DNA from: Octopus bimaculoides | Taxonomy: Eukaryota | Length of the DNA stretch: 41,947 nt | Reading direction: 5' to 3' | NCBI RefSeq assembly: GCF_001194135.2 | Contig: NC_068982.1 | Location: 100,279,493 to 100,321,439, forward strand | Shown: positions 5,585-32,056 of the stretch, in pieces | Position numbering within the stretch: the first letter of the stretch is position 1 | How the letters are laid out: each line of letters opens with the position of its first letter | The notes under the pieces: model-generated | What the model was told of the DNA's origin: nothing | What the model saw: the letters and a program-made list of their open reading frames with translations, nothing else | The model's database searches: none | Made by a program: the position numbers and the translations under genes

Positions 5585-5948
5585 CTATGGGAAAAACAAA
5601 GGCTTTTTGACTTCAAATTTTGTAGTGCTTCTATCTTGATATATTTCATAAGGATCATCTGGGAAATATCTTTTCTTCAGCCAGTGACGAGAAACCATTT
5701 TCTCTAATTTCTTAGATTGAGTCTTGTTGCAAAAAACTGTTTCTTGGAGCCTGAAAATACGCCTGCTGGATTTAGCCCAACGTTTATTATTTCGACCAGA
5801 TCTTGCTCTAATCCAAAGTCCAGATCTCAAGCGATAAAATCGACTTATTACAGCTGAACTAGATTTTGGTCTGCCTCTTTTATAGCTACAAACTATTTTA
5901 TTTCGAATGCTTATGACATTAGGTGTCTGTGGAGCACTCAGTAGTTTT
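5585..5948 (-). CDS. MRPL35: Mitochondrial ribosomal protein L35 (bL35m), coding exon 3 (terminal; contains the L35 domain)
   Basis: [75 protein letters not shown] matches recalled vertebrate MRPL35 ([44 protein letters not shown]). Acceptor ttttgtcttcttccag|A, phase 2. TAG at 5587-5585. Confidence 0.95.
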
Positions 5949-8408: not shown

Positions 8409-8551
<143 letters not shown>

Positions 8552-9382: not shown

Positions 9383-9584
9383 TGATTTAATCCATTACAA
9401 CCTATATATCTATGAATTTGCGTTGGTTGGCAGACAGAGACAAATGATCTGAGAGGCATAAGTGAATTTTGGTTGTTGAATTGATGCAAAAGTAGTGGTT
9501 TTGATGACACAGAAGAAATTATGCTTGGTAAAGATGCAGGTGAATACATAGATTTTGCCACATATTGAGTAGCAGCAGATAAAA
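9383..9584 (-). CDS. MRPL35: MRPL35 coding exon 2 (presequence-like: VLSAATQYVAKSMYSPASLPS...GCNGLNQ)
   Basis: Acceptor (t)12ag|TTTTATC and donor AATCA|gtaagt. The 202 nt convert phase 1 (exon 1) to phase 2 (exon 3), giving an open 594-nt CDS. Confidence 0.9.
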
Positions 9585-10680: not shown

Positions 10681-10681
10681 C

Positions 10682-12154: not shown

Positions 12155-12182
12155 CTCTGAAGCCCTGCCTGACACAAGCCAT
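12155..12182 (-). CDS. MRPL35: MRPL35 coding exon 1 (MACVRQGFR)
   Basis: gcaATGG start context and consensus donor AGAG|gtgagt. Phase 1 fits exon 2. Arg-containing, acid-free presequence start. Confidence 0.88.
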
Positions 12183-12279
12183 TGCAATAACGTGCTCCTG
12201 AGCAGGTTCAAGGAGAACAACTCCCGACTTCCGGTTTTCAATCCATGTCGCTTCCTGTCGGTGGCTTGGTAGCAGCGCA
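12183..12279. promoter_or_regulatory. Shared bidirectional promoter plus both 5' UTRs (97 bp between the MRPL35 and IMMT start codons)
   Basis: Divergent ATGs at 12182 (-) and 12280 (+). About 8 CpGs in 12140-12310 against a CpG-poor background. The TSS positions are unknown. Confidence 0.85.
12227..12234 (-). promoter_or_regulatory. ETS/GABP(NRF-2)-type motif CCGGAAGT; a second ETS core, CAGGAAG, at 12251-12257
   Basis: Exact consensus match (ACTTCCGG on +), centred between the two start codons. Confidence 0.65.
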
Positions 12280-12318
12280 ATGTGGAAATCAAGTCGGGGT
12301 GTTTCAGCAAGATTAAGG
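12280..12318 (+). CDS. IMMT: MICOS subunit MIC60 (mitofilin), exon 1 (MWKSSRGVSARLR)
   Basis: gcaATGT start and donor AGG|gtagga. Phase 0 fits exon 2. The Arg/Ser-rich, acid-free peptide continues the presequence. Identified by splice logic and composition, not by strong homology. Confidence 0.82.
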
Positions 12319-13499
12319 GTAGGAATTTCCACTGAACTTTCATTTTAAAGGAATTATTATCGATTCCCAAATACATTTATAATATTACATACTCTGTTAT
12401 TCCACGCTATCTCTTCATTTACTTTACTTTTCCCTTCACTTAATTCGACCTTCATACCCTCATTCCGTATCACCTTTCTGTGATCTTCATTATAATATTT
12501 TTTTATGTACTTTTAACTGTCTTTGCTTACAGTATTATTAAAAATATAGATTAATTCAGACCTGAGCACTTTTTTTTATTTCCTTTTTGGCAGCAGTTAA
12601 TTAATAAATTATTAATTGACTTTTACTTTCTGAGTATACTATTTTAGTCAATCGACTATATTTGTAATGATTACTTTGATGACAAATTATTTAGTCGCTA
12701 TTTAAGAAAATCTTTGACATTTTACAGAACATTAACTCATAGAAAATAAATGTTAAAACTATTTAATTTTTATGTTCATTTTTAACTTTGAAAATAGATT
12801 ACAAGTTCACCGACCAATTGTTGCAAGGTGAAGCTTTTGGATAATAGATTTTGCTCCGTTTTATTAACAATAAAAAATAAATGTTATAAAATCACAGTAA
12901 GAACAAGACACATTTATAAAAACAAAATTATAAAATATAAATATAATTTTTTACATTCAACTGTTACAATTTTATATCACCCCCACCAATCATACGTTTG
13001 TAAAAGCATGATGTTAAATATTTAATAAATAGATCCCGTTAAAAATAAATCTATATAAAGGACATCAACCCTTGTTTCTTGCATGGCAAAATTCACTTTC
13101 CTTGTTTGGTCTATGACAACTGTGACTATTTATTTATTTATTTCCAATACATTAATGGGCTATCTTCGGTAAGCATTTTCATATTCGTACTCTTACTCGG
13201 GATATCCAAGATATATCCCCACCCGCAAATGTTATAGCTTCATTAATAGTCCTGCTGGTATATGCAGTGAAAACCAAAGACCGCCTAATAATGAGATTAT
13301 GGTAAAGTGCTCACGTGTATTTTTGAAGACTGTAAATTTGGCTGGTATTTTTAGTAGGTCGACCGAGGTTTCCTGGTTGTTTTCTGGAAACGAATTTGTA
13401 GAATCCGGTGATTGAATTGACCGTAGTATTTTACTAGTATAAATTCATGAGATTCCTGATATGATGTGCTACCAGTTGTTAGAAACCACACCTAAAATA

Positions 13500-13690
13500 A
13501 TAGTTTCTAACACAGACACAAAGCCAAAAGTATATTGAGAGGAGGGTGTTAGTCATTTAACTCGACCCCACTATTTGAGTGGTACTTCTTTTTATTGCCC
13601 CCTGAAAGATGAAAGGCAAAGTTTGAACTCAGAACGTAAAACGCCAAAACAACTACCACCAAGCATTTTGTCTAAAGGTCTTACGGCTTT
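13500..13690 (-). mobile_element. tRNA-derived SINE (Meta-like family), antisense
   Basis: gtggtacttcttttattgcccctgaaagatgaaaggcaaagtttgaactcagaacgt is the reverse complement of the 23980 family. Confidence 0.75.
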
Positions 13691-13802
13691 GTCTATACTC
13701 CACCGTCTTTATCATGTTCTAAATTATGACATATCGTTTAACATGCTGAAGTACAAAATTAAAATATTGTTTGTTATAACAAGTCTTTTCCCCTTCTCTG
13801 TA

Positions 13803-13990
13803 TCAATCATCATCATCGTTTAATGTCCGTCTTCCATGCTGGCATGGGTTGGACGGTTTTACAGGAGCTAGGCAGGCAGGAACCTGCACCAGACTCCTGT
13901 GTCTGTTTTGACATGGGTTTTATAGCTGGATGCCCTTCCTAACACCAAGCACCCAACAGAGTGGACAAAGTGCTTTTTACATGGCGCAAG
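13803..13990 (-). mobile_element. RTE-tail SINE-like element
   Basis: catcatcatcgtttaatgtccg...gctggatgcccttcctaacacc. Confidence 0.8.
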
Positions 13991-14065
13991 CAGTAAAATG
14001 CCATCTCTGTTTATAGACTGGATAGTAAAAGTGTAAGATTTATCAATTTTGGCATCATTGTTTAA

Positions 14066-14283
14066 CCCTTTAGCATTCAGATTAATCTGTCATACGTAAA
14101 GCCTGTTTAATTACATTGTTTTAAATTAATTGTACAGCATCTTGTATCTGAGATTTTGATGATGTCCCTGTTTATTTTTAGAATGACTTTGTAGGGTAGG
14201 TGTGAGAGGTCAGAGCTGGCTGATTTGAGCATAAAACAAGAAGACAATTTTAGCCTGATATGGCCGGTTTAAACACTATGGGG
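14066..14283 (+). mobile_element. piggyBac-type MITE, copy 2
   Basis: TTAA|CCCTTTAGCATT...ACACTATGGGG|TTAA, 218 bp. Confidence 0.8.
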
Positions 14284-14331
14284 TTAAGCCACATCATATC
14301 AAGACCAGGTTGCTCTGCTTCAGTAGTTTAA

Positions 14332-14551
14332 CCATTTAGCATTTCAATTACTCTGTCAAATGTAATGCTTAAATATTCACATAGTTTTGGTTTAATCATG
14401 CATTTTCTCATTAGTTTCATGATTTCGATGATGTGATTGTTTATTTTTAGAACGACTTTTCAGAGTAGGTGTAAGAGGCTGGATCTGGCCAGCATAAACA
14501 TAAAACGGGTAGAATATTGGGGCCCGATATGACTGGTTAAATGCTGGAGGG
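14332..14551 (+). mobile_element. piggyBac-type MITE, copy 3
   Basis: TTAA|CCATTTAGCATT...AATGCTGGAGGG|TTA. The interior is homologous to copy 2. Confidence 0.75.
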
Positions 14552-15129
14552 TTATTTTAATTATAGATTCTTATCCCACTTAGGAAAAGGAGATGATTTA
14601 ATACAAATGGGTGAAATTTCATTTATAAAACCTCTTGAGGACAAGATAAACACAAACATATCTCTACTGTAAGCTATAGTTGTTCCCTAAAGTTGGTAGT
14701 TACCTCTGGATTTCATAATATTAAATGGTTGATTGATATATTTCTCTCTGATTAGGATCTGAGATACTGAAATACAGATTTGTAACCATTTAAACTAAGG
14801 CATTTTGAATGAAGTGTTTTCTGATCCATGACTGTTTTGTCTCAGATGTACCAATATTGATAACAAAAATTAGAATTTGAGAAAGAAAAAAAAAGAACCA
14901 GAGAAAAAAAAAACAATTTTGTAAAATTAGTTTGCATGCTGTGAAATAAAGTGAGTTTATGGCCCAAACAGGGCCATAAAATTTTTGTTATAGTCACAAA
15001 GTTATAGTTTTTTGCCATAGTCAGAGGCATAGCATTTATTTTAAGTGGCTTTGTTCAGAGACAGAGGTTTTCAAGTATTGGTATTTGTGTATTTCAATAT
15101 GTCTTAGTAGTGTAGTTGCTGTCTCTGTT

Positions 15130-15478
15130 GCTGTTGCCATGTGGGGTATAAGTTCAAAGAGTTTAGTTGAACAAATTGATCCCAGGCCTTATTTTTTAAA
15201 GTCTGGTACTTATTCTTTTTGTCTTTTTTGCATAACTGCTAAGTTAGAGGTATGTAAACAAACCAACACCGCCTGTCAAGCATTGGTGGGTGAGTGGCAA
15301 GCACACACACACACACACACACATGTATGAAGATCATTTAGTTATATATTTTTATCTACCTAATTGACTCACAAAGTCCAGGACTATAATAAAGATACTT
15401 GCCCAAGGTACTGTATAGTGGGACTGAACCTGAAACCATGTAGTTGCAAAGCAAGCTTATTAACCATTCAGCCATATC
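15130..15478 (-). mobile_element. tRNA-derived SINE with long tail
   Basis: Reverse complement of the 8765/25638 family, including cttgcccaaggt..gggactgaacc. Confidence 0.8.
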
Positions 15479-16197
15479 TTTAGAATATTGAAAATTTTTG
15501 ACTTACAAACCTTTTCTGCATTGGTATGTCATGAAAGTTTGGAGAATTTTATATGTTTTTGTTACATGGACAAGTTTTGTATTTCTGTTTCATAATTTAA
15601 AACCATGAGCACTTGTTTTTGTAATTTTTTGAATTTGATACAGTTTGACATATGACTTCCCCAATGTTTAACTTCTGGTTTTTATAGGAATAACTGCTTC
15701 TATCTATTAGCATGCTTTTTTCTGCTAGAAAGACAAAAAAAAAAAATGCTAATCTTTCAAAAATGTTTATACCTTTCATTGTCCATTTGAAATTCAAATT
15801 ATACCCTTATTCTTTTAGTATCTAATAAAAATGGTTTTGTCTTTTGTAGTGTGGAAACATCTATAGATTTTATCTCCAAAGGGTTAAATATTCAATTTCT
15901 ATTTTTCATCAATACAGAGATATCTAAATTTCCAAACTAAAAAATGTAAGGGAAAGACAGAACAATGTTGCTATTTATTTGAAAAATTAGGTTACACAAA
16001 ATTAAGTCTTACGTTTTGAGTAAACATTATAATTTCATTACAAAGAGCAATTTAGTATTAATTTCTTGATTAAGTGTATTTTTATCAGTTGCTTCATCTG
16101 TTTGTATTTCATATAATGTTTGTAGTATTTATTACTTAGCCAAATCTTTCAACTTTAATAGAAAGTCTCTTTTATTTTTGTGTTATTTAAATTTCAG

Positions 16198-16286
16198 CGC
16201 TGTTGTGTTGCTAAGTACCAGCAGGCCTTAATACACTCAAGAAGAAAGCTGTCAACACAAGCACCAGATTCTAGATCCTCTTTCAA
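16198..16286 (+). CDS. IMMT: MIC60 exon 2 (RCCVAKYQQALIHSRRKLSTQAPDSRSSFK)
   Basis: tttcag| acceptor and AA|gtgagt donor, phase 0 to 2. RRKLST resembles a presequence cleavage region (human RRYST). Confidence 0.88.
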
Positions 16287-17084
16287 GTGAGTTCAGATTT
16301 TATACTTTAAAATGGAATATTTTCAGATCAGTCATAATAGTAATTATGTGTTGTATATTGAACTGTAATTAGTTTGAATATTTAAGTAGTTTTCTTCACA
16401 ACCATATGGTTGGTACAAACAAAATCTATAGAAGCCTCTATGTGTGTGTGCTTTGCATCTGTATTGAAGAGAATAATGTTATAGCTAGCAACTAAACTAC
16501 ACTCAGCTATATTTCTCTGTTAATTAATAAATATATAAATAACATACTATAAATATTAGAATAAATTCATAGAAGACTCATAAAGCATCAATCTTTTCCT
16601 TTTAATTCTATGTGTTTGATGTCTCACTTCACTACCATCTATTAATTTTATTCTGTCTTATTTCTTAAACTTTAAATATTTAAATCCTTCTAAAACTTCT
16701 TCCTCACGTGCACTTCTAACTTTTGACTTGTAATAATTCAGTCTGATTATCAACCGCATTAACTTTACCCATTTGCCATATATTCTAGTCTTTGACCAAC
16801 CAGGTGAAGCCTAAGAAAATAAGTTATCAATAGATGACAAATTCTGGCATGGTTAACTTTGTATATATTTGAAGGCCAACTACTAATCAATCTGTCCTGG
16901 CTGAGGTGCTTGTAAAAACGCTGTAACTTCAAGTTATATTGTTATTCTTGATTTATTTATCTACCAAAATTACTGTGCCATTTATTGTTAATTTTACATG
17001 AAGTTTCAGAGGTTTTAATTACTTTTTAAATAAAACCCTATCATTTTGCTTACCACAACACTTGTTTTTTATTTCTTTTTATAG

Positions 17085-17273
17085 ACTTGGTAAATGGATC
17101 TTAGGGACTGGCTTAACAGGTTTCACTGGTGTCATTGGTTATGCTTGGTATGATCCTTCGGTGAAGAATGCTATTGAACAAAACATTCCCTATTCCAAAG
17201 AGGCCTTGAAACCAATCTTTGATATGTTGCCTGAAAAAGTTACTCTTCCTTCACTGCCTCCCTATATAAAGCA
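17085..17273 (+). CDS. IMMT: MIC60 exon 3 (transmembrane anchor, LGKWILGTGLTGFTGVIGYAWYDPSVKNAIEQNIPYS)
   Basis: Matches the mitofilin TM plus D..F/V...E..IPYS motif. Acceptor ttttatag|. Donor CA|gtagtg is the only one that keeps frame with exon 4. Confidence 0.9.
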
Positions 17274-17804
17274 GTAGTGTGTATACTTATTGTTTCTTCT
17301 CCATTCTTTATTTTTGTTTTGTTTATTAAAATCTTTGTTTTTAATTAGTGTTATGTAATTGAGTACTGCATTGTTTTTTTTGAATTGTGGTGAAAGCAAC
17401 AACAGCACTATCAACTAAAATTTATGTTAAATGTTCATAATTTCTGTAAATGTAATAAAGATTTGGTAATAGTTGTTCACTTTCTGAAATATTGTTAAAT
17501 AAATGAAATATAATTTTCTTGTTTTAAGTTGTTTGCTGTTGTTGTTGGTTTGCGCTCTAGAGCAGTAATTCAACTAATTTATATCTACTATACATTGCCA
17601 ATGAAAAGAAAAAATGTCTCATAAAAATGCTAGTTAACTCTAGAGTCATTAGAGTTGATGAGATATAAATTTCTCTTAAGATAGGACATCAGTGTCTTTC
17701 AGATTTTCAAAATTGATGGGTAAACTAAGTGCCCTGTCCAGTACTATCAATATATATTTTATTATAGTTACAGCTTTGTTCATCTTCATATCTGATGTTT
17801 TTAG

Positions 17805-17865
17805 TTTACCATGGTCAACAAAAGAAGAACCTGCACCACAAGAAGCCCCAAAACCTGTGAAAAAG
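17805..17865 (+). CDS. IMMT: MIC60 exon 4 (LPWSTKEEPAPQEAPKPVKK)
   Basis: tttttag| acceptor and AAG|gtaagg donor, phase 2 to 0. Confidence 0.82.
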
Positions 17866-18237
17866 GTAAGGGTTTACTTATATTATTTTGTTTTTGTTTA
17901 TCATTTTACAGGCACCCTAAAAGTATCAAGAATGCAATGTCTAGCTGTAGATAGCTCTTGAATTACACTATTTACAAAATAAAGTGTTTCTTGTCCTGTT
18001 ATTTTCAGAAGCATTTAGTTAACTTCAAAGCGATTATGTATTCAGTTCTTTGGATCATTGTTTAGTGTCATATCAGGTTTCTTTTTCTTTTTATAAGTAA
18101 CTCTCTACAGCTTCCAAAAACCAGTGTCAAATTATTGCTGTCAAATTAAGCTGATGTTTTGTTACCATCTTTGGTAGAGTTAATAACAGATACTTCGAGA
18201 ACTCCCAGTCATCACCATGTTAAATATTTTTATTTGT

Positions 18238-19215
18238 ATCATCATTATTTAATGTCCATTTTTCCATGCTTGAGTGAATCAGACAGAATTTGTTGAGGCA
18301 GGTTTTTGGTGGCTGGATGCCCTTCCTGTCACCAACTCTGACTTGTTTCCAAGCAAGGTGATATTTTCCCATAGCTACACATGTTTTTCACAGCAGACTG
18401 GAAATGAATAACCTTACTTGTATGATAGTCATGCTCATTTACAACCCTCATGTGATATCTAGTCATGAGTACACACAAACACACACACACATGGTTTCTT
18501 TCAGTTTCCATCTACCAAATCCACTCACAGGTTTTTCTATAATAAAAGACACTTGCCTAAGGTGCTGTGCAGTGGGATTCTTCTCAACCACACAGCTATC
18601 ATTGTGTATAGTGCCAAAACAAGCTGAAAATTTTAATTGAGAGCTGAAATGTTGTCTAAGACTAAATCTTCAAAGACATATCATTGAACAGTGTTTATTA
18701 TAATCTCTCATCCACACTTTTAATAATAGTAAAATGTCATCTGATACTTTAAACATTACCCTTCTTAAGGAATTTAAACATTTCATTAGATAACTTGTTT
18801 ACAGCTCAGAATATGTTCAGAGTTTTTGTAGAATCGCACCAGTTCATGATTCTAAATATTTCGAATGGTTTTGGCTGGTTGTGTGGTTAGAAGCTTACTT
18901 CTCAACCACATGCTTCTGGGTCCAGTTCGACTGCATGACACTTTGGGCAAGTACTTTCTACTATATCCCTGGTCTGATCATAGTCTTGTGAATGGATTTG
19001 GTAGATGGTAAATTGAAAGAAGCTCATCATATATATGTGTGTGTATGTGTGCATCTCTTTGTATATGTCCCCGTAACCTAGTGGTTTGGCAAACGAGATT
19101 GATAGAATAATTACCAGGCTTTAAAAAAAGCACTGGGTCTATTTGACTGAAAAAACCCTTCAAGGCAGTGCCCCAGTATGGCCACAGTTCAATGATTAAA
19201 ACAAGTAAAAGATAA
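18238..19215. mobile_element. SINE-like cluster (RTE-tail variant 18238-18480 -, SINE 18480-18600 -, SINE 18878-19215 +)
   Basis: Shared family motifs as above. Confidence 0.75.
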
Positions 19216-19322
19216 ATGTTGAAGTAGCTCTCCTGTAAAAATAACTGCTTTTTATTTATTCATTTAAAGTTCTGTTGAATGTATGTTGGTTTTGAACTGG
19301 AGGCATTTTTTTTCTCTTTCAG

Positions 19323-19362
19323 ATCCTTAAATTACCTGATCCTGAAGAAATAAAGAAAAAAG
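19323..19362 (+). CDS. IMMT: MIC60 exon 5 (ILKLPDPEEIKKK), 40-nt micro-exon
   Basis: tttttttctctttcag| acceptor and G|gtaaat donor. Needed to convert phase 0 to 1. Confidence 0.82.
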
Positions 19363-19974
19363 GTAAATGCATTGATTTATTGATCTTAAGTAACCAATAT
19401 GTTTAGCAGTAGTTTGGCAGATTTGGTAGAGCAACTGACAAAGTGCCATGTAGTATTTAGTTATGTTTTATTATCTGAGTTCAAATACTGACAGTTGACT
19501 AAGCATTGTATTCCCAAAAAACAGACAGTCATCATCATCATTTAACGTCCGTTTTCCATGTTGGCACTTGTTAGATGGTTTGACTTGAGCTGGTAAGACG
19601 GAGAGCTGTACTAGGGTCCAGTCGTCTGTTTTAGCTTGGTTTCTACAATTGGGTGCCCTTCCTAATACCAATCACTCTACACAGTGTACTGGGTGTCTTT
19701 TACATGTCACCAGCAAAGAGGCCCTTTTATGTGTCACCAGCACTGGCCAAAAGACAATTTACTTGTTAGCTCTGTGTATTGCTAAAGTATACCTTGGAGG
19801 ACTTGAAGTCATGTGGCTTGACTTATGAATTCAGGTAAGAATGGGCAAGAATTGTGCTTTGGCTGACCCTCCCCACATCTATTGATATTAACAATGAAAC
19901 TAAATATTATTAGAATAGTAAAGATGTTAATCATTAATGTATATTTATCAGTGTTGTATTCTCATGACTTTCAG

Positions 19975-20166
19975 AAGCTGCCGAGAAAAAGTTAGCAATG
20001 GCTAAAAAAGCCGAAGAAGAAAAGAGATTAGAAACTGAAAAAGAATTGAAGAAGAAGAAAGAGGCAGCAAAACACGAAGAAAGAGCTTTGGAAACTGCCA
20101 GACAGAAAGCTGAAGTGGAACGTCAGTTGAAGGAGAAACAAGCTGTAGAGGCTGCAGAAAATGAAG
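19975..20166 (+). CDS. IMMT: MIC60 exon 6 (E/K/A-rich coiled coil)
   Basis: tttcag| acceptor and G|gtacag donor, phase 1 to 1. EAAEKKLAMAKKAEEEKRLETEKELKKK. Confidence 0.88.
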
Positions 20167-20830
20167 GTACAGTTATTTTCTCTTCCATATTTTTTTTGTC
20201 CCTTAGCTGAATTGTTAACAATTACCAGAAACATACGACCAAGGGACATAACTTATGCTATCTACACCAAAAGCTTAGTGTCTCAGTACATGGTAGAGTG
20301 AGATAAACCAACCCAATGTATTATAATACATATGCAGTGATAGGAACTCAGTGATTATTTTAATTTGATCAGTAATTAATTTACCAAATATATTCTAGCA
20401 CTTTAGGTAAATATATTTTACTGTATCCTTGGGTTGATCAATAAATGTGCGTGCGTGTGCTTGTGTTTGTGTGTGTGGGGATGTGTGTGGTTCCATAACT
20501 ATAGGTCTATAAAATAAGTATGAGACTTGAATAAGTTCTAGGGTCAATAAGATTGACTAAAACATTTGAAAGCAGTGCCTCCGGATATTTGCAGCCTAAT
20601 AACTAATACCAGTTAAAGAATAGATACATACACTTGTATATACATAAACATAAATACATGTACATTAGGTACAGACTGTGAATATGCACTCTGGGTACAT
20701 ACTAAACTTCCCCATCCATGATACTACTTGTATTACTAACAATAATTTACAACTATCACATGATGTAAAGATAAGGTGACACAAACATACACATACTCAC
20801 ACACATATATACATGTATACATGCTTATGT

Positions 20831-21250
20831 ACTGGTGCCATGTAAAAAGCACCCACTATACTCTGTAAAGTAGTTGGTGTTAGGAAGGGCATCCAACTGT
20901 AGAAACGAGCCAAAACAGACAATTGGTGCCTGGTGCAGTGCTCTGACTTGTCAGCTTCTGTCAAAATGTCCAACCCATGTCATTATAGAAGGCGGATGTT
21001 AAATGATGTTGATCATCATATTCATCGTCGTTTAACGTCCGTTTTCAATGCTGGCATGGGTTGGATGGTTTGACTGAGGACTGGCAAGCCAGGAGGCTGT
21101 ACCAATCTCTAATCTGATTTGGCAAGGTTTCTACACCTGGATGCCCTTCCTAACACCAACTACTTGGAGAGTGTAGTGGGTACTTTTTATGTGCCAGTCA
21201 GGTGGCACTGGCATCAGTCGCGCTTGAATGGTGCTTTTTACATGCTACTG
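20831..21250. mobile_element. Tail-to-tail pair of RTE-tail SINE-like elements (+ 20831-21012, - 21013-21250)
   Basis: ...ggatgttaaatgatgttgat is followed directly by catcat..cgtttaacgtccg. Confidence 0.85.
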
Positions 21251-21659
21251 GCATGGGATGCTTCTTTCAGTTTCTGCCTATCAAATCCACTTACTAGGCT
21301 TTGGTAAGTTTGGAGCTTTGGTAGAAGACACTTGTGCAATATGTATGAATATATACACATACACACAGCCATATGCACACACACACACACACACACTCAC
21401 ATGCACACATGTGAGAGAGAACATGATGGAAGTCTGCTTATATCTGACAGACTAATGCCCTACATTTTAGAAAAGTTGCAGTAGATGGGTGTATCTCTGT
21501 AAATAATTGAAATATTTGACATTTTTTATTGTATACTCTCTACTCTATTTTAATATTTTTAGTCTATAATTGCTTACATTTTCATTATTATTTTTGGTTA
21601 ACATTGGGCCAACCAAAGCCTTGTGAGTGGATTTGGTAGATGGAAGTTGATGATTGTTT

Positions 21660-21946
21660 GTGTTTCCCTGTTTTGATGGCAGTTGTGAATGAGTGTCACT
21701 GTTATACTAGCAGTATTGTTTATTTTCAGTATTCTGCACAACATGTCTAACCATGGGGGAAATATTACCTTGCTTAGGAACAGGTGTAGGTTGGCTACAG
21801 GAAGGGCATCTGGCTGTAGAAAATTTGTGTAGGCATGGGAAAATGAACACTGAAATTATTCTTTTATTCTTTTACTTGTTTCAGTCATTTGATTGTGGCC
21901 ATGCTGGATCACTACCTTTAGTTGAACAACTCTGTAAAAACATACA

Positions 21947-21978
<32 letters not shown>

Positions 21979-22570
21979 TACGGTAGGCTTCTTTCAGTTT
22001 ATGTCTACCAAATCCTCTCACAAGGTTTTGGTCGGCCCGAGGCTATAGTAGAAGACACTCTCTGAGTGGTTGGCATTAGGAAGGGCATCCAGCTGTAGAA
22101 ACTCTGCCAAATTAGATTGGAGCCTGGTGTTGCCATCCGGTTTCACAAGTCCTCAGTCAAATCGTCCAACCCATGCTAGCATGGAAAGCGGACGTTAAAC
22201 GATGATGATGATGATGATGAACTCTACCCCAAAACTCATTCTTTGTAAGCCTAGTACTTATGCTGTCAGTCTCTTTTGCCAAACTGCTAAGTTGTGGGGA
22301 CGTGGACACACCAACATCGGTTGTCAAGTGATGTTGGGGGAACAACACAGACACACAAATACACGCACACATACACTCTCTCTCTCACACACACACACAC
22401 ACATACGGTAGACTTCTTTCAGTTTCTGTCTACCAAATCCTCTCACAAGGTTTTGGTCGGCCCGAGGCTATAGTAGAAGACACTTGTCCAAGGTGCCACA
22501 CAGTGGGACTGAACCTGGAACTATGTGGTTGGGAAGCAAGCTTCTTACTACACGGCCACTCCTGCACCTA
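21660..22570. mobile_element. Nested SINE cluster, including a young RTE-tail copy (22060-22220 +) and a tRNA SINE (22240-22570 -)
   Basis: Family motifs. A direct duplication, 21941-22059 and 22370-22484, is also present. Confidence 0.8.
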
Positions 22571-22910
22571 TGATGATAATTGCTATATATTTTCATTGTT
22601 ATCTTTTTTATGTTTTTTTTTTCTCGTGCACTCATGGGTTGAGCAAGTAGTCTTGAAGACTCCCACCTCTTGTTTCAGCCATTTTAACATCTGGCACAAA
22701 ACATGTTTTTACAGAATATGGAAAATGAATGACATTCATTTACATATATATATGTGTGCATATGTGCATGCACACACACACACACATATGCAACACAATA
22801 CATGTATTCTGGATTGTATTAAATCCAGTGTATTCCTCTCCTTCAAATTCATGGTTTTACACCAATGTAACCAGCCTATCATTATATAATTCCATTTCTT
22901 TTTTCCTCAG

Positions 22911-23050
22911 CTCTTGTACTCATAGTTACCACGGCAATGAAGAATGCTAAGGAGGCAGCAGCCAAAGCAAATGAATCTATGGGAAAAAGAGTGGAAGCAG
23001 TAAAGCAACATGCCAAATTCCTCAAGAATGCAATGGAGGATGCTTCAGCG
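22911..23050 (+). CDS. IMMT: MIC60 exon 7 (ALVLIVTTAMKNAKEAAAKANESMGKRVEAVKQHAKFLKNAMEDASA)
   Basis: ttttttcctcag| acceptor and GCG|gtatgc donor, phase 1 to 0. AV..H...LK.AM[ED] is typical of metazoan mitofilin. Confidence 0.92.
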
Positions 23051-23344
23051 GTATGCTAACCAGTTTTTTATCTAAATTCTTCCAACTCATCATGTCTACC
23101 ATTGACTTTTTATTAATACTTATCACTTCTTCCATTAATTAGCTTTTCTCTTAATTTCATCTTTCTTGCTTTATTGTTTTTTTCTCTTAACTTCTTTCCT
23201 TTTTTTCTTTTTTTACCTTTTCTCCTTTCTTTTGCTGTCTTTTCTTTCTTTCCATACCATTTCCTTGCTTATTCATGTTTTCTCCAATAATTTAAACTAA
23301 AATTATTCACATTAACTTCATGCTTAATTATCTCAATCCCCCAG

Positions 23345-23750
23345 TCTTGTAAATATTAAAAAAGCACTGGTGACGTACAACCATGTAAAGACACTGGTGA
23401 TGGTGCCAAGTAAAAAGCACCCAGTAAATATTCTGTAAAAACATATCAGGCCATGGGAAAATATTGACTTGCTTGGAAACGGGTAAGGGTTGATGACAGG
23501 AAGGGCATTCGGCCATAGAAAATCTATCAATAAAATCCACTTGACCCATGCAAGCATGAAAAAATAGACGATGAGGATTTGACATCAGAACATATAGAAC
23601 TCTGTAAAGTGGTTGGCACCAGGAGGGGCATCCAGCCGTAGAAACCATGCCAGCACAAACACTGGAGCCTGGTTTGGCCCCTGACCGTACCAGCTCCTGT
23701 CAAACCATCCAACCCATACCAGCATGGGAAAATGGATGTTAAATGATGAT
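23345..23750 (+). mobile_element. Two RTE-tail SINE-like elements with internal ~20-bp repeats
   Basis: aaaaagcactggtg repeats, gggcat(t/c)c cores and (GAT) tails. Confidence 0.75.
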
Positions 23751-23979
23751 GTGGGTGATGGTTAGTTGTAAGTTACCTTGAATAAGATATTTGCAGTTAT
23801 ATTCAGTACATATTTTATAGTGTATTGATAATTGATTTTCTTCTTTTTTTTTCTTCTTTTTTTTACAATTATTTAAGGTAGACTAGGAGATTTATGTGGG
23901 GGTTGAACACATCTCCACCTTCTCTCTTCATTTTCTAAGCTCTCACCTACATTTGAGTATCAATATTTTGGAATTCTAA

Positions 23980-24400
23980 GGCAGCGAGCTGGCAGAAATG
24001 TTAGCACACCAAGCGAAATGCTTAGTGGTATTTCGTCTGTCTTTACATTCTGAGTTCAAATTCTGCCAAGGTCGACTTTGCCTTTCACCCTCTCATGGTC
24101 GATAAATTAAGTACCAGTTGTGTACTGAGGTTGATCTAATTGACTGGCCCTCTCCCCAAACATTTTGGGCCTCAATTCTCTAAGGTGGTCAGCTGGCAGA
24201 ATTGTTAGCATGCCAGGCAAAATGCCTAGCAGTATTTCATCCATCTTCACATTCTGAATTCAAATTCTGCTGAGGTTGACTTTGCTTTTCATCCTTTTTT
24301 TGGGGTAAAATTAGTACCAGTTGAACACTGGGGTTGATGTAATTGACTTACACCTGCCTCTGAAATTGCTGGCCTTGTGCCAAAATTTGAAATCAATATT
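23980..24400 (+). mobile_element. Head-to-tail dimer of tRNA-derived (Meta-like) SINEs
   Basis: Two copies of gagctggcagaa..ttagca..GAGTTCAAATTC..gactttgcctttcatcc..aagtaccagttg (23980-24175 and 24184-24400). Confidence 0.85.
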
Positions 24401-24806
24401 TTGAAATTCTCTTAAAGTAGTATCTTCAACAGGTATAGCAATATCAATCGATTTGAATTGAATTTGAGTCATTATATTTCATTTCATTGTGCACCAAATT
24501 CTCAAGTCATATCTATAAAGTGTTCATACTGGATTATGCCAGCATGGAAAACCAATGTTAAATAATGATGATGATTATTATGACAGTATGACAGGAAATT
24601 GGAAAGTTACTTTATCAGCTTTTTTTCATTTCTGGTTGTAGCTAGTTTCGGTGATTGATATCTAGGATGAATTTGTTAAAGGCATGAATTTCAAACCTAC
24701 ATATATCTTCTTAAAAGTCCTTAATATATCGGGAATAATTTTTGTGTTGAAAAAATATGAAAGAGGCTAAGCAGTTTGATTTTTGTACCATTTTCTGCTT
24801 GTAAAG

Positions 24807-24904
24807 GTTTTGGAGAAAGACAGTCAGTGGCAAGCTGTAGCCAGTGCATATGAGATACGTCAAGCTGTCACAAATGAATGTGAGAAGAAAGTGATGAATG
24901 CCAG
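24807..24904 (+). CDS. IMMT: MIC60 exon 8 (VLEKDSQWQAVASAYEIRQAVTNECEKKVMNAR)
   Basis: K.SQW matches the conserved K.AQW motif. Acceptor ttttctgcttgtaaag| and donor AG|gtaaat, phase 0 to 2. Confidence 0.9.
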
Positions 24905-25637
24905 GTAAATGTCATTGTTTTATGTTTCAAAACTTCTACAGTAGTCATGTTAGTGCAGAGGTAAGAGTGTTCAATCTAATGCATAAGTGTAACGAGCTCA
25001 AAATCTGTAGCTCTGTGGTTCAAATCATGCAAAAATTTCTTAGGTTCATGAATAACTTATCACTAGATGTTAAACAATGATTACACACACACACACACAC
25101 ATATATGAGAGAGAGAGAGGCTTCTTTCAGTTTCCATCTACCAGATGCACTCACAAGGCAGTGAAGAATGTTGTGAAGAGAAAAGGGATGAGATGCTGGG
25201 TCATCTGCTGAAGAAAGAATGACTAAGTTTGAGGTAACAGTTTGTGTGGATCATATGTTTAAGTCCAAACTGTCAGCATAGTCTCTGGTTTACAAATGAA
25301 CAGTTAGATCTAGAAGTGAAGTCACTTCAAAAGAATAAATCATGCTTCCATTCTTTATGGTTTGGTGGTAGGAAGTGTGTATATTTAACAGTGGTAAAAC
25401 TCCAGCTTGTGCGTCATATGCAACTCTCAAAGCTAATATCTGCAGCTCCTGAGATTTACAACCTACCAGCTGGATTTTGAAGTATTAATTGAAAAAATGA
25501 AAATTCAGTAAATGTTTTCAATGTGCAGAGATAAATCAATTCAGCTTTGTCAATAAAACTATGTAAGAGCATATTTTCTTGTTTTAAATATTATTCTTAC
25601 ATATATTGTAACTTTTGAAATAAAATAAAAGAAAAAT

Positions 25638-26030
25638 CATAAGCACAGGTGTGGTTGTGTGGTAAGAAGCTAGCTTCCCAACCACATGGTTCTGGCTTCA
25701 GTCCCACCGTGTGGCACCTTAGGTAAGTGTTTTCTACTATATCCTTGGGCTGACCAAAGCTTTGTGACTGGATTTGGTTGATGAAAACTGAAAGAAGCCC
25801 TTTCATATATCTATGTGTGTGTCTGTGTTTAACCCCCATCACAGCTTGACAAACAGTATTGGTGTGTTTAGGTCCCATTGACATAGCAGTTCGGCAAAAG
25901 AGACTGATAGAAAAGGACCAGGCTTTAAAGAAAAAGGACTGCGGGGTTGACTCATTCGATTAAATATTTTTCTAGGTGGTGCTCCAGAATGGTTGCAGTC
26001 TCACAACTGAAACAAGTTAAAGATAAAAGA
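25638..26030 (+). mobile_element. Near full-length tRNA-derived SINE
   Basis: gtggttgtgtggtaagaagc..gcttcagtccc..gtggcaccttaggtaagtg..tail gaaacaagttaaagataaaaga. Confidence 0.85.
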
Positions 26031-26133
26031 TATATGTGACTAAATAATTGTGTTATCATTTCCAATACACAGCAGTGTCTTTAATAGAATTTTGACTGAT
26101 GTCTTCTTGAATATTTTTCTCTTTAAATTTCAG

Positions 26134-26269
26134 ATTACAATTAGAAAAACTTCGCAAAACATTGGATGATGGTTTTAGTAACACTGTTACCAAACACAAT
26201 GCACAATTGATTGACGGACAAGAGTTATTTAATAATATTTCACATAGCTTGAATATATCTTCAAGTGAG
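26134..26269 (+). CDS. IMMT: MIC60 exon 9 (LQLEKLRKTLDDG...NISSSE)
   Basis: tttcag| acceptor and GAG|gtaaga donor, phase 2 to 0. Confidence 0.9.
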
Positions 26270-26314
26270 GTAAGATCCTCTTTCTTTTTTTCTATTCATT
26301 TCTCTTTTTCTATC

Positions 26315-26830
26315 ATCATCATCATCATATGTCTGTTTTCCATGCTGGTATGGACGGCATGACAGGAAGTGGCAAAGCCAGGTACTGCACCAGGTTTTCA
26401 TCGCTGGATGCCCTTCCTAATGCCAACTACATTGTGTACTGGGTGCTTTTTATTTGGTACCAGCACCAGTGCTTTTTTCGTGGCACCAGCACCCACACTA
26501 ATGCTTTTTGTATAGCAACTTGGTTTTAGGGTCTCAGTTCTATTCTGGCAGGCAGGTCTTCTCGAGCACAGCAATGCACCACATATTTCGATCTGCTGTT
26601 ATCTCCTTTATTAGGTTCAGAGTTTTGAGATTGGCCTTCAATACTTCATCCATTGTCTTCTTGGGTCTTCTTCCTCTTCTGCAACTTCCCTCCACTCTAA
26701 GTAATTGGCACTTCTTTATGCAACTGTCCTTATCCATCTGCATTACTTGACCAAGCCAGCATAGACTCCTCTCTTGCATACTATCTAATTCCTCTTATCC
26801 CCAAACCTCTCTCTAAATACACCAATACTC
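26315..26830 (-). mobile_element. RTE-tail element plus RTE LINE 3' fragment
   Basis: MQERSLCWLGQVMQMDKDSCIKKCQLLRVEGSCRRGRRPKKTMDEVLKANL. Confidence 0.85.
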
Positions 26831-27700
26831 TGTTGTACATGCACACTGACATTGCATGTGTGTATATATGTTACAATGGTGACCCACTGTCTCTTTCTTC
26901 CCTCTCAATAATATGTAATGGAATGGAGCCTGTTTGTTGTCAGTCAAGTTAATTGAAGCAAGCAGAACCTAGGAATTTACGAGTATTACACAATAGCTTT
27001 AGTAATATTTGAACTTGCCACCTTGTGATCAAAAGTACAGTACCTTAATTTCATAGTTATTGTGATATTATGATAGCATTTACTTCCTGAACTTATGAAC
27101 AATGGCTCAACATGTGTGGAATGCTGTAATGTTCAAGCCAATCCAAAGAGTTATTAGAGCTATAATTAATGTGAAGTGGTTCCAACAAAAAATTTAAAAC
27201 TGGCTCATAGTTTTCGTTCACTGGAAGTTTTCTTCTACACTACACAGATTGATCAGTCTTCAGGCATATGGCAAACAGAATTGTGCAGGAGGAAAACAGA
27301 CGTTTATTTCTAATTTCCATTTTCCTTATTTGCATGGATTGGTTGGAAACCATTGAGGTAGATTTTCTATGGCTGGATGCCCTTCCTGTCAAGAACCCTT
27401 ACCTGTTTCCAAACACACATTTACATACGTATATACATATACATAGTGATGATATACACATATACACATATATTTTTTTATATATATACATGTATCATCA
27501 TCATCATCGTTTAACGTCCGCTTTCCATGCTAGCATGGGTTGGACGATTTGACTGAGGACTGGTGAAACCGGATGGCAACACCAGGCTCCAGTCTGATTT
27601 GGCAGAGTTTCTACAGCTGGATGCCCTTCCTGTCAAGAACCCTTACCTGTTTCCAAACACACATTTACATACGTATATACATATACATAGNNNNNNNNNN

Positions 27701-27751
<51 letters not shown>

Positions 27752-27769
27752 CACACACACACACAGAGT

Positions 27770-28110
27770 GTGTGAGAGAGAATCATGATGTCATAGGAGA
27801 GAAATGTGTCCGCAAGGATGATGGCTCACTTGCATTTAATGAGGCTACAAAGAGAGAGACTTGGAGATGCCATTATGAAAGGTTGCGAAATGAAGAGAAT
27901 GAATGGGAGAAAGAGAGTCTGCCAAATGTCAACCCAACAAAGGGACCAGCTATCTGAATTGACAGTATCTTGGTAGATAAAGCAATTAAGGGTATGAAGA
28001 CAAGAAAAGCCCCCCAGTCCATCAAGAATCACCATAGAGATGCTTAAAATATCTGGTGGTGTCAGCTACAGTCTAGTCACCCGTATAGTCAGTCAGGTGA
28101 TACACGAAGG
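27770..28110 (+). mobile_element. RTE-type LINE ORF2 fragment (upstream of the RT core)
   Basis: DVIGEKCVRKDDGSLAFNEATKRETWRCHYERLRNEENEW, then VDKAIKGMKTRKAP and, after a frameshift, ITIEMLKISG. Confidence 0.85.
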
Positions 28111-28490
28111 AGACCTTGCCAGATCAGATTGGAGCTTGTTACAGCCTGGCTTGCCAGTCCTCAGTCAAACTATCCTGCCCATGCCAGCATGGAAAGCAGA
28201 CGTTGAACAACGATGATGATATATATATATATGTACACACACACACACACACATATATATGCATGATAGGCGGGCTTCTTTTAGTTTTTTCTACCACATC
28301 CACTCACAAGGCTTTGGTCAGCCCAGATTATAGTAGCAGATAATTGTGCAAGGTGCCACACAATAGGATTGAACCTAGAACCAAGTGGTTGGCAAATAAC
28401 CACACAGCTACACCTATGCTTAGGTTTTCTTATATTTGAATTTATTTAGCAGTTATATCCCTAACCGTTTTTTCCATTCATATCTGACAG

Positions 28491-28617
28491 GTATCTAGAG
28501 CAGAAAGTGAAGGTAAAATGGCTGAGAAGTATAAACATCTTGTGGATCAAAGCCGGGAGAAATTTCGAAGAGAGCTCGAAAGTATTGTGCCTAATGTAAA
28601 GCTTGGTGATAAACAAA
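28491..28617 (+). CDS. IMMT: MIC60 exon 10 (VSRAESEGKMAEKYKHLVDQSREKFRRELESIVPNVKLGDKQ)
   Basis: Matches the conserved ..Y..LV...R..F..EL.SI.P motif. gacag| acceptor and A|gtaagt donor, phase 0 to 1. Confidence 0.95.
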
Positions 28618-30900: not shown

Positions 30901-30988
30901 CTAGTAATTCCAAATAACTCTTGATCACTTTACTAGTTCATCTGGGTGCTGTTTTGAGTTGAAAACCTTCTGTATTGATTACTTCTAG

Positions 30989-32011: not shown

Positions 32012-32056
<45 letters not shown>

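What the first reader, a model, noticed from the sequence alone, without database searches (positions are those of the whole stretch)
12155..12318. Ultra-compact bidirectional promoter: only 97 bp separate the MRPL35 and MIC60 start codons
Seen: the first coding exons of two spliceable mitochondrial genes diverge from ATGs at 12182 (-) and 12280 (+). Both core promoters and both 5' UTRs must fit in 97 bp or overlap, although every intron here is repeat-inflated. The ORF track hides both exons. Inference: one nucleosome-free region could co-regulate a mitoribosome subunit and the cristae-organising MICOS core, and is under selection against TE insertion.
Basis: partly seen in the sequence, partly recalled or inferred. 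Interest (0 to 1): 0.78.

Follow-up and report, generated by a model that had tools for sequence, protein, structure and literature searches.

The report
Octopus MRPL35–MIC60 shared divergent promoter
Two octopus nuclear genes for mitochondrial proteins (mitoribosomal bL35m/MRPL35 and cristae organiser MIC60) really do start back-to-back 97 bp apart, around two cephalopod-conserved ETS-type binding motifs; this is an ordinary kind of bidirectional promoter whose coding starts are already in public annotation.

Summary
The window is Octopus bimaculoides. The ATGs at 12182 (-) and 12280 (+) are 97 bp apart, and each is followed by a canonical donor. The spliced MRPL35 translation is identical to XP_014773688.1. 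RefSeq's MIC60 coding sequence starts at exactly 12280.

The same head-to-head pair occurs in three other cephalopods, with 97 bp (O. sinensis), 95 bp (Argonauta) and 103 bp (cuttlefish) between the start codons. The spacer is a small GC- and CpG-rich patch. It holds two ETS/GABP-like motifs that are invariant in all four species: CCGGAAGT, and ACAGGAAGCG inside an invariant 14-mer. Their GGAA cores are always 23 bp apart.

The best reading is a compact, ETS-driven bidirectional promoter, which is a well-known class. Nothing here maps a transcription start site.

Three caveats apply:
- RefSeq v2 (XP_014773688.2) reads through the spacer and MIC60 exon 1 from a 5' exon 21 kb away, so the 5' ends may overlap.
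- Conservation extends about 260 bp into MIC60 intron 1, so regulation is not confined to 97 bp.
- 97 bp is typical for this class, not "ultra-compact".

A ground squirrel keeps the head-to-head adjacency at 2.9 kb with two separate CpG islands. The four other animals checked do not show the pair within 10 kb.

Verdict: new member of a known kind, modest interest.

The parts
12183..12279 (.). 97-bp spacer between the two start codons; proposed core of the bidirectional promoter
   Evidence: Length and sequence. GC is 54% and CpG o/e 0.86, against 36% and 0.28 for the window. Identity is 97% to O. sinensis, 76% to Argonauta and 48% to cuttlefish. The adjoining MRPL35 intron scores only 88%, 44% and 39%. 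Spacer length is 97, 97, 95 and 103 bp in the four species.
12227..12235 (-). ETS site 1: ACCGGAAGT, matching 8 of 9 positions of the strict GABP consensus CCGGAAGTG; nearer MRPL35
   Evidence: This is the only CCGGAAGT in the 41.9-kb window; 0.17 are expected by chance. ACCGGAAG is invariant in all four cephalopods. The consensus is from PMC2077898.
12249..12262 (-). ETS site 2: ACAGGAAGCG inside the invariant 14-mer ACCGACAGGAAGCG; nearer MIC60
   Evidence: All 14 bases are invariant in Octopus (two species), Argonauta and cuttlefish (invariant columns 159-172 of the first sequence). It is the only exact match in the window. Its GGAA core lies 23 bp from that of site 1 in every species, with no gaps between them in alignment A3, although the intervening bases diverge.
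12155..12182 (-). MRPL35 (bL35m) coding exon 1, MACVRQGFR + 1 nt, donor GTGAGT
   Evidence: The spliced product is identical to XP_014773688.1. The orthologous start is annotated in O. sinensis, O. vulgaris, Argonauta and cuttlefish. In Argonauta and cuttlefish, in-frame stops lie 42-45 nt upstream.
9383..9584 (-). MRPL35 coding exon 2 (presequence region)
   Evidence: Conserved in O. sinensis and Argonauta.
5585..5948 (-). MRPL35 coding exon 3 with the Ribosomal_L35p domain and the stop codon
   Evidence: Pfam PF01632, E = 3.8e-11.
12280..12318 (+). MIC60 coding exon 1, MWKSSRGVSARLR, phase 0, donor GTAGGA
   Evidence: The RefSeq coding sequence starts here. Nucleotide identity is 39/39 to O. 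sinensis and 38/39 to Argonauta. The cuttlefish exon has the same 13-codon length. The next in-frame Met lies after the transmembrane segment, so this ATG is needed for the targeting sequence.
16198..16286 (+). MIC60 coding exon 2 (rest of the basic presequence)
   Evidence: The acceptor AAATTTCAG| and the donor are conserved in O. sinensis and Argonauta.
17085..17273 (+). MIC60 coding exon 3 (transmembrane anchor LGKWILGTGLTGFTGVIGYAW)
   Evidence: A weak Mitofilin N-terminal hit below the Pfam cut-off. Conserved in O. sinensis and Argonauta.
17805..17865 (+). MIC60 coding exon 4 (in frame with exons 1-3)
   Evidence: Overlaps the block 17782-17875 that aligns with Argonauta.
30989..33854 (+). 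MIC60 3' coding exons, approximately 30989-31212, 32309-32537 and 33235-33854 including the stop (Mitofilin domain). The middle exons between 17866 and 30988 are only partly mapped (about 19975-20121, 24807-24905, 28491-28617).
   Evidence: tblastn with mollusc and human MIC60. Pfam Mitofilin E = 4.7e-55. Candidate exon boundaries. RefSeq coding sequence end.
12319..12577 (.). Conserved non-coding block in proximal MIC60 intron 1 (upstream of MRPL35 on its strand); likely an extension of the promoter or regulatory region
   Evidence: Together with 12751-12861, this is the only co-linear non-coding sequence still alignable with Argonauta: window 12141-12577 aligns at 74%. It contains fully conserved stretches such as AAATTCGACCTTCATACCC. 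It is not alignable in cuttlefish.
33576..33677 (-). Alternative 5' coding exon of RefSeq model XP_014773688.2, antisense inside MIC60's last exon. It is spliced (donor CT|GTAAGT) to an acceptor at 12337/12336 and then reads through MIC60 exon 1, the spacer and MRPL35 exon 1.
   Evidence: It is probably a minor isoform or an artefact. The extension is acidic and does not resemble a targeting sequence. Its frame is closed by stops in Argonauta and cuttlefish, and its acceptor AG is lost in Argonauta.

Best explanation
The 97-bp interval is the core of a compact, TATA-less, ETS-driven bidirectional promoter. It is shared by two nuclear genes for mitochondrial proteins of Octopus bimaculoides: bL35m (MRPL35, - strand) and MIC60 (IMMT/mitofilin, + strand).

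Shown:
- Both start codons, the first exons and their splice junctions.
- The gene identities.
- The same arrangement, with a 95-103 bp spacer, in four coleoid cephalopods.
- Two invariant ETS-type motifs at a fixed 23-bp spacing.
- A local GC/CpG peak.

Inferred:
- An ETS-family activator of the GABP/NRF-2 type, possibly bound as a heterotetramer across the two sites, holds one nucleosome-free region open.
- Transcription starts in both directions within or just beside the spacer. This gives very short 5' UTRs (under about 60 nt) or 5' ends that overlap slightly.
- The conserved ~260 bp of proximal MIC60 intron 1 adds further regulatory input.
- Dependence on shared elements keeps the spacer free of insertions and keeps the two genes linked.
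For: - Coordinates and splice sites.
- The MRPL35 model equals XP_014773688.1.
- Pfam L35p and Mitofilin hits.
- The RefSeq MIC60 coding sequence starts at window 12280.
- The same head-to-head pair with coding-start gaps of 97 bp (O. sinensis), 86 bp annotated or 95 bp to the orthologous ATG (Argonauta) and 103 bp (cuttlefish).
- In alignment A3, ACCGACAGGAAGCG and ACCGGAAG are invariant and their spacing has no gaps.
- Against cuttlefish, the only alignable non-coding DNA is 12227-12321, which covers the ETS sites and MIC60 exon 1.
- CCGGAAGT occurs once in the window against 0.17 expected.
- Spacer CpG o/e is 0.86 against 0.28 for the window.
- The spacer is more conserved than MRPL35 exon 1 or either flanking intron.
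- In-frame stops with no alternative ATG lie upstream of both starts.
- Both N-termini are basic and almost free of acidic residues, as mitochondrial presequences are.
- Literature: GABP binds more than 80% of human divergent promoters, and inserting a single CCGGAAGTG increased reverse-direction activity in 4 of 6 unidirectional promoters (PMC2077898). Head-to-head pairs most often have start sites 101-200 bp apart and resist separation (PMC1487180). Conserved 5'-5' pairs such as HSPD1-HSPE1 are attributed to co-regulation (PMC3514665).
Against: - No transcript, start-site, chromatin or expression data could be consulted, so promoter activity and co-regulation are unproven.
- RefSeq XP_014773688.2 contains an exon running from 12336 through the spacer, preceded by a 5' exon 21 kb away. 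At least some MRPL35 transcripts may therefore start outside the spacer.
- Acceptor-like sequences lie just upstream of both ATGs: TGCTCAG|GAGCAC on the - strand and GGTAGCAG|CGCA on the + strand (read directly). Non-coding 5' exons elsewhere therefore cannot be excluded.
- An out-of-frame upstream ATG at 12245 (+) would sit in the MIC60 leader if its start site were upstream of it. It is not conserved.
- The binding factor is assigned by motif only.
- Site 2 has GGAAGC rather than the optimal GGAAGT.
Confidence: 0.68

Rival explanations
1. Two overlapping promoters with overlapping transcripts. The MRPL35 start site lies upstream of the spacer, inside MIC60 exon 1 or proximal intron 1 (about 12320-12580). 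The spacer would then be MRPL35 5' UTR, and the two mRNAs would be antisense to each other at their 5' ends. The ETS sites would serve mainly MIC60.
For: - The RefSeq v2 exon extends to 12336 on the - strand.
- The conserved non-coding block lies only on the MIC60-intron side, at 12319-12577. The MRPL35-intron side is not conserved.
- MIC60 exon 1 is conserved even at synonymous sites between Octopus and Argonauta, 38/39.
- The distance from ETS site 2 to the MIC60 ATG is nearly fixed, whereas the distance from site 1 to the MRPL35 ATG varies by -2 to +7 nt.
- Overlapping head-to-head pairs are a recognised subclass (PMC1487180).
Against: - Such a leader would carry an upstream ATG (ATGGATTGA at 12247-12239, - strand).
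- The 12319-12577 block is not conserved in cuttlefish, yet the pair and the spacer are.
- Both ETS sites have their GGAA on the MRPL35 sense strand.
- There are no RNA data for either view.
Confidence: 0.2
2. The spacer is not a promoter. One or both genes are transcribed from distant non-coding or alternative first exons, such as the exon at 33677-33576 (-). The 97 bp would be internal exon or 5' UTR sequence conserved for other reasons.
For: - XP_014773688.2 joins 33576 to 12336 with canonical GT..AG sites.
- Acceptor-like sequences lie just upstream of both ATGs (sequence).
Against: - The acceptor AG at 12337 is lost in Argonauta.
- The N-terminal extension has 8 acidic residues in 85 and does not look like a presequence.
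- Its frame is closed by stops in Argonauta and cuttlefish.
- Annotations of O. sinensis, O. vulgaris, Argonauta and cuttlefish, and v1 of O. bimaculoides, all start at the orthologous ATG.
- A precisely spaced pair of invariant ETS motifs in a CpG-rich patch is the signature of a promoter, not of a UTR.
Confidence: 0.07
3. The arrangement is chance juxtaposition of two housekeeping genes with no shared regulation. The spacer is short only because nothing has inserted there.
For: Only about 31% of the window consists of intra-window repeats. The repeat-free zone around the promoter (about 11415-13793) is not exceptional in size.
Against: - The pair, its orientation and a 95-103 bp spacer persist in four cephalopods spanning octopods and cuttlefish.
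- Motif-level invariance and fixed spacing sit within otherwise diverged sequence.
- The head-to-head adjacency is also found in a mammal.
Confidence: 0.05

Closest known systems
GABP (NRF-2)/ETS-dependent bidirectional promoters of vertebrate housekeeping and mitochondrial genes (Collins et al. 2007, PMC2077898; PREPL-C2ORF34 with NRF-2 + YY1, PMC2713978)
   Same: Divergent gene pair, very short TATA-less intergenic segment that is richer in GC and CpG than its surroundings, ETS core motifs matching CCGGAAGT, two tandem sites, and both genes encoding mitochondrial proteins.
   Different: Factor binding, start sites and bidirectional activity are untested here. The organism is a cephalopod, for which I know of no such promoter being characterised. 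The CpG-rich patch is tiny (about 100-160 bp) rather than a kilobase-scale CpG island. Site 2 is GGAAGC, which is suboptimal.
Conserved 5'-5' co-regulated microsyntenic pairs (CAMPs), e.g. HSPD1-HSPE1 (Irimia et al. 2012, PMC3514665); conserved head-to-head pairs such as MRPS11-MRPL46 (Li et al. 2006, PMC1487180)
   Same: Unrelated genes of one organelle or pathway are kept head-to-head over long evolutionary times. Here the pair is found in coleoid cephalopods and in a mammal.
   Different: I could not check whether MRPL35-IMMT is on the published lists, because the supplements are not held. The pair is absent within 10 kb in starfish, Trichoplax, an icefish and Polypterus. Ancient linkage is therefore plausible but not shown.
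Mammalian IMMT-MRPL35 locus (thirteen-lined ground squirrel, L005/L006; from my own recollection the human genes are also neighbours at 2p11.2, followed by REEP1)
   Same: Same two genes in the same divergent orientation. MRPL35 is followed by a convergent gene (a REEP-type TB2_DP1_HVA22 gene in the mammal).
   Different: There are 2,885 bp between the coding starts, and two separate CpG islands are divided by about 1.8 kb of CpG-poor DNA. This does not meet the usual <1 kb criterion for a bidirectional promoter. The compact single-patch form is the cephalopod state.

Membership tests
Bidirectional (head-to-head) promoter | Two adjacent genes on opposite strands transcribed away from each other | tested here: met
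   MRPL35 is on the - strand from 12182 and MIC60 is on the + strand from 12280. The same arrangement is found in three other cephalopods.
Bidirectional (head-to-head) promoter | Transcription start sites less than 1 kb apart (Trinklein/Li definition, PMC1487180) | not testable with these tools
   Only coding coordinates are available. The start codons are 97 bp apart, so the criterion is met unless a start site lies in a distant 5' exon, as in RefSeq model XP_014773688.2.
Bidirectional (head-to-head) promoter | Shared cis-elements or bidirectional activity of the intergenic fragment; correlated expression | not testable with these tools
   This needs reporter assays and expression data. The indirect support is the motif-level conservation.
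GABP/NRF-2 (ETS)-dependent promoter | Presence of an ETS/GABP consensus site (CCGGAAGTG) in the promoter | tested here: met
   CCGGAAGTc at 12227-12235 (-), matching 8 of 9 positions of the strict consensus, and ACAGGAAGCG at 12249-12258 (-). Both are invariant in four species.
GABP/NRF-2 (ETS)-dependent promoter | Actual binding by GABP alpha/beta (or the cephalopod orthologue) and dependence of transcription on the sites | not testable with these tools
   No ChIP, EMSA or mutagenesis was possible. Several ETS-family members share this motif, so the factor assignment is inference.
Mitoribosomal protein bL35m (MRPL35) | Ribosomal_L35p domain with an N-terminal presequence; orthology to annotated bL35m | tested here: met
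   Pfam PF01632 scores 43.7 bits against a cut-off of 28.9. The model is 100% identical to O. bimaculoides bL35m (UniRef A0A0L8HD38) and 91% identical to O. vulgaris bL35m. There are no acidic residues in the first 77 aa.
MICOS subunit MIC60 (mitofilin/IMMT) | Mitofilin domain, N-terminal presequence plus a single transmembrane anchor, coiled-coil middle region | tested here: met
   Pfam PF09731 at E = 4.7e-55 on the last exon, with further exon hits. Homologues are named MIC60 from oyster to human. The N-terminus has 11 basic and 1 acidic residue in 43 aa, followed by LGKWILGTGLTGFTGVIGYAW. The middle exons are not fully modelled.
Conserved ancestral microsyntenic pair (CAMP, Irimia 2012) | [quoted passage not shown] | tested here: inconclusive
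   The linkage is present in cephalopod molluscs (four species) and one mammal. It is absent within 10 kb in a starfish, Trichoplax, an icefish and Polypterus.

The most novel reading that the evidence does not exclude
The MRPL35-MIC60 head-to-head linkage is an ancestral bilaterian co-regulatory unit. On this reading it has been retained for more than 500 million years in both cephalopods and mammals because the mitoribosome subunit and the MICOS core share ETS/GABP-type promoter elements. Cephalopods would preserve the compact, single-patch form with strictly spaced tandem ETS sites. Initiation from start sites less than 100 bp apart, or overlapping, might couple or mutually limit the two genes' outputs.
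Probability: 0.3. Interest if true: 0.5.

Novelty: new member of a known kind. Interest (0 to 1): 0.3.

Why it matters
If the promoter works as proposed, it is a clean and very small natural example of a bidirectional promoter in a mollusc. It has about 100 bp, two fixed-spacing ETS sites and no surrounding CpG island. It links mitochondrial translation (bL35m) with cristae architecture (MIC60).

It could serve as a compact dual-expression element for cephalopod transgenesis. It could also serve as a test case for whether ETS/GABP control of nuclear mitochondrial genes, established in vertebrates, extends to lophotrochozoans.

The presence of the same divergent pair in a mammal hints at an old co-regulatory microsynteny.

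None of this challenges current understanding. It extends a well-described promoter class to a new lineage, and the coding annotation is already public.

Tried and rejected
- **Octopus MIC60 protein.** I tried to retrieve the full-length protein to verify junction 12318/16198 residue by residue. The search returned only C-terminal fragments and distant homologues. I relied instead on the RefSeq coding range and on exon and splice-site conservation.
- **Complete MIC60 exon chain.** A filtered splice-site and ORF screen recovered exons 1-4 and the 3' exons. It did not give a phase-consistent middle section: the candidate exon at 19975-20121 is out of phase with exon 4. I left this unresolved because it does not affect the finding.
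- **Contig look-ups that failed.** Ostrea, Marmota and Lemmus MIC60 isoforms were not on record.
- **N-terminal extension of XP_014773688.2 as the true start.** Rejected, because it is acidic, is not conserved as an open frame, and its acceptor is lost in Argonauta.
- **Non-coding RNA in the spacer or the conserved intron block.** There were no Rfam or tRNA hits anywhere in the window.
- **TE-like ORF remnants near the promoter** (10238-10732 and 11166-11414). They gave no Pfam hit, so calling them LINE or mariner remnants rests only on my reading of the sequence.
- **Literature.** I found no paper discussing MRPL35 and IMMT as a bidirectional or syntenic pair. Supplements of the two genome-wide pair catalogues are not held.
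- **YY1 and NRF-1 motifs.** There is no convincing match in the octopus spacer by direct reading. I searched them by pattern only in the squirrel locus.
- **Bacterial promoter/terminator scan.** Not used, because it does not apply to a eukaryote.

Full report
**Organism and observation**

The window is eukaryotic. It has 36% GC and contains assembly gaps, microsatellites and interspersed repeats. My spliced translation of the minus-strand gene is identical over 197 aa to Octopus bimaculoides bL35m (XP_014773688.1 / UniRef A0A0L8HD38). The window is therefore O. bimaculoides.

- The minus-strand ATG is at 12182. Exon 1 (12182..12155, MACVRQGFR plus 1 nt) ends at CAGAG|GTGAGT.
- The plus-strand ATG is at 12280. 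Exon 1 (12280..12318, MWKSSRGVSARLR, phase 0) ends at AAGG|GTAGGA.
- 97 bp (12183-12279) lie between the two start codons.
- The acceptors at 9584 (-) and 16198 (+) are canonical.

**Gene identities and models**

MRPL35 has three coding exons: 12182-12155, 9584-9383 and 5948-5585. The product has a Ribosomal_L35p domain (PF01632, 43.7 bits). Its closest relatives are annotated bL35m proteins of O. vulgaris/O. sinensis (91% identity) and Argonauta hians (70%).

MIC60 exons carry the Mitofilin domain (PF09731, E = 4.7e-55 for the last exon). They match MIC60 from oyster to human. In the chromosome-level RefSeq annotation (locus L009), the Mitofilin coding sequence is 728 aa. It maps to window 12280..33854, so RefSeq uses the same start codon.

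MIC60 exons 1-4 (12280-12318, 16198-16286, 17085-17273, 17805-17865) join in frame. They encode a basic presequence followed by the transmembrane anchor LGKWILGTGLTGFTGVIGYAW. The next in-frame Met lies beyond that anchor, so the ATG at 12280 is needed for a functional protein. Exon 2, with both its splice sites, is conserved in O. sinensis and Argonauta.

Both N-termini look like mitochondrial presequences. MIC60 has 11 basic and 1 acidic residue in its first 43 aa. MRPL35 has no acidic residue in its first 77 aa. I did not resolve the poorly conserved middle exons of MIC60.

**Is the arrangement more than chance?**

Yes. The same divergent pair is annotated in three other cephalopods:
- O. 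sinensis, with a 97-bp gap between coding starts.
- Argonauta hians, with 86 bp as annotated and 95 bp to the orthologous ATG.
- The cuttlefish Acanthosepion pharaonis, with 103 bp.

Identity of the spacer to O. bimaculoides is 97% (O. sinensis), 76% (Argonauta) and 48% (cuttlefish). The adjoining MRPL35 intron scores only 88%, 44% and 39%.

Against Argonauta, the only co-linear non-coding DNA that still aligns across 13 kb is 12141-12577, plus 12751-12861. Against cuttlefish, only 12227-12321 aligns.

Within the spacer, two motifs are invariant in all four species:
- ACCGACAGGAAGCG (window 12249-12262, - strand).
- ACCGGAAG (12228-12235, - strand; the full site reads CCGGAAGTC).

Their GGAA cores are 23 bp apart in every species, although the bases between them have diverged. 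CCGGAAGT occurs once in the window against 0.17 expected. The exact ACAGGAAGCG also occurs once.

The spacer has 54% GC and a CpG o/e of 0.86. The window as a whole has 36% and 0.28.

**Mechanism**

These features match a well-described class: TATA-less bidirectional promoters driven by ETS-family factors, especially GABP/NRF-2. The supporting literature is as follows:
- Collins et al. (PMC2077898) give CCGGAAGTG as the strict GABP consensus. They report GABP at more than 80% of human divergent promoters. Inserting one site significantly increased reverse-direction activity in 4 of 6 unidirectional promoters.
- Li et al. (PMC1487180) show that mammalian head-to-head pairs most often have start sites 101-200 bp apart and resist separation.
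- Irimia et al. (PMC3514665) show that deeply conserved gene pairs are mostly 5'-5'. They attribute some of these to co-regulation, with the mitochondrial HSPD1-HSPE1 pair as their example.

I therefore propose that an ETS factor bound to the two fixed-spacing sites keeps one small nucleosome-free region open. Both genes would initiate from it, with very short or slightly overlapping 5' UTRs.

This step is inferred. No start-site, chromatin or expression data were available. The factor is assigned by motif alone.

**Complications**

1. The current RefSeq model XP_014773688.2 (282 aa, "uncharacterized protein LOC106871627") adds an N-terminal extension.
   - Its first coding exon lies at window 33677-33576 on the minus strand, antisense inside MIC60's last exon.
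   - A strong donor (CT|GTAAGT) is spliced to an acceptor at 12337/12336.
   - From there the model reads through MIC60 exon 1, the spacer and MRPL35 exon 1.
   - I do not think it marks the real translation start. The extension has 8 acidic residues in 85. The frame is closed by stops 42-45 nt upstream of the ATG in Argonauta and cuttlefish. The acceptor AG is lost in Argonauta. All other annotations start at the orthologous ATG.
   - It still keeps alive a rival in which MRPL35 start sites lie upstream of MIC60's ATG and the two transcripts overlap.
2. Conservation with Argonauta is asymmetric. It extends about 260 bp into MIC60 intron 1, with fully conserved stretches such as AAATTCGACCTTCATACCC, but stops about 14 bp into MRPL35 intron 1. 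The regulatory region is therefore larger than 97 bp and lies on the MIC60 side.
3. Acceptor-like sequences sit just upstream of both ATGs, so distant non-coding first exons cannot be excluded from sequence alone.

**Wider distribution**

In the thirteen-lined ground squirrel, Mitofilin (-) and MRPL35 (+) are also head-to-head, with a REEP-type gene downstream. There the coding starts are 2,885 bp apart. Each gene has its own CpG island, and the two islands are separated by about 1.8 kb of CpG-poor DNA.

The pair is not found within 10 kb in four other animals:
- A starfish.
- Trichoplax.
- An icefish.
- Polypterus.

I checked these four loci by tblastn.

Independent chance adjacency of the same two genes in the same orientation in molluscs and mammals is unlikely. 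An ancestral linkage is therefore plausible.

I found no paper that discusses this pair.

**The "TE exclusion" claim**

About 31% of the window consists of intra-window repeats. The nearest repeats to the promoter are at 10117-10641 and 13794-13992, and a further TE-like ORF remnant lies at 11166-11414. Those remnants gave no Pfam hit.

The repeat-free zone around the promoter is about 2.4 kb, which is not remarkable in itself. The better argument for constraint is the near-constant spacer length across lineages whose introns have diverged beyond alignment.

**Verdict**

The case is best described as a new, uncharacterised member of a well-known class of promoter, for a gene pair whose coding annotation is already public. 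"Ultra-compact" overstates it. Interest is modest. The most interesting open points are a possibly ancient MRPL35-MIC60 linkage and the strictly spaced tandem ETS element conserved across coleoid cephalopods.

Noticed in passing
window 33576-33677 (-) and 12336 (-): RefSeq XP_014773688.2 starts MRPL35 with a coding exon antisense inside MIC60's last exon. Its 21-kb intron spans the whole MIC60 gene. It is either a real rare antisense-spanning isoform or an annotation artefact that turned bL35m into an "uncharacterized protein".
   Followed up: partly
window 12319-12577 and 12751-12861: Conserved non-coding blocks in proximal MIC60 intron 1 are shared with Argonauta but not with cuttlefish. They include fully conserved stretches such as AAATTCGACCTTCATACCC at about 12441-12460. 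On the MRPL35 strand this stretch reads ...TGAAGGTCGAAT..., which loosely resembles a nuclear-receptor/ERR half-site. That resemblance is a lead from memory only.
   Followed up: partly
window 12245-12316 (+): An out-of-frame upstream ATG (ATGTCGCTT...) overlaps ETS site 2 and ends at a TAA inside MIC60 exon 1. It is present in both Octopus species, absent in Argonauta and followed at once by a stop in cuttlefish. It suggests the MIC60 start site lies downstream of 12245, or that a small upstream ORF is tolerated.
   Followed up: partly
L005 6901-10200 (Ictidomys tridecemlineatus): The mammalian IMMT and MRPL35 genes are head-to-head. They have two separate CpG islands and 2,885 bp between coding starts. 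A REEP-type (TB2_DP1_HVA22) gene lies convergent to MRPL35.
   Followed up: partly
window 6193-6379, 8219-8382, 13794-13992, 15157-15482 and others: A short interspersed repeat family has up to about 15 copies in the window. Copies also occur in the O. sinensis and Argonauta loci. A (TA)n/(CA)n microsatellite-rich segment at 8391-8640 has more than 90 self-matches.
   Followed up: no
window 10238-10732 (-), 6476-7010, 26540-26779; 11166-11414 (-): Retrotransposon-like and transposase-like ORF remnants lie in MRPL35 intron 1 and in MIC60 introns. None reached Pfam significance, so the classification is unverified.
   Followed up: partly
window 27691-27700, 29196-29205, 32061-32214, 34288-34658, 35757-35998: Assembly gaps (runs of N) are flanked by TA/CA microsatellites. 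The gap at 32061-32214 lies about 95 bp upstream of a MIC60 exon (32309-32537).
   Followed up: no
window 1-888 (+), by mapping from L009 42790-48093: The 3' end of a convergent neighbouring gene (a 510-aa product with no Pfam domain) appears to fall at the left edge of the window, tail-to-tail with MRPL35. O. sinensis and Argonauta have a similar neighbour of 494-509 aa.
   Followed up: no
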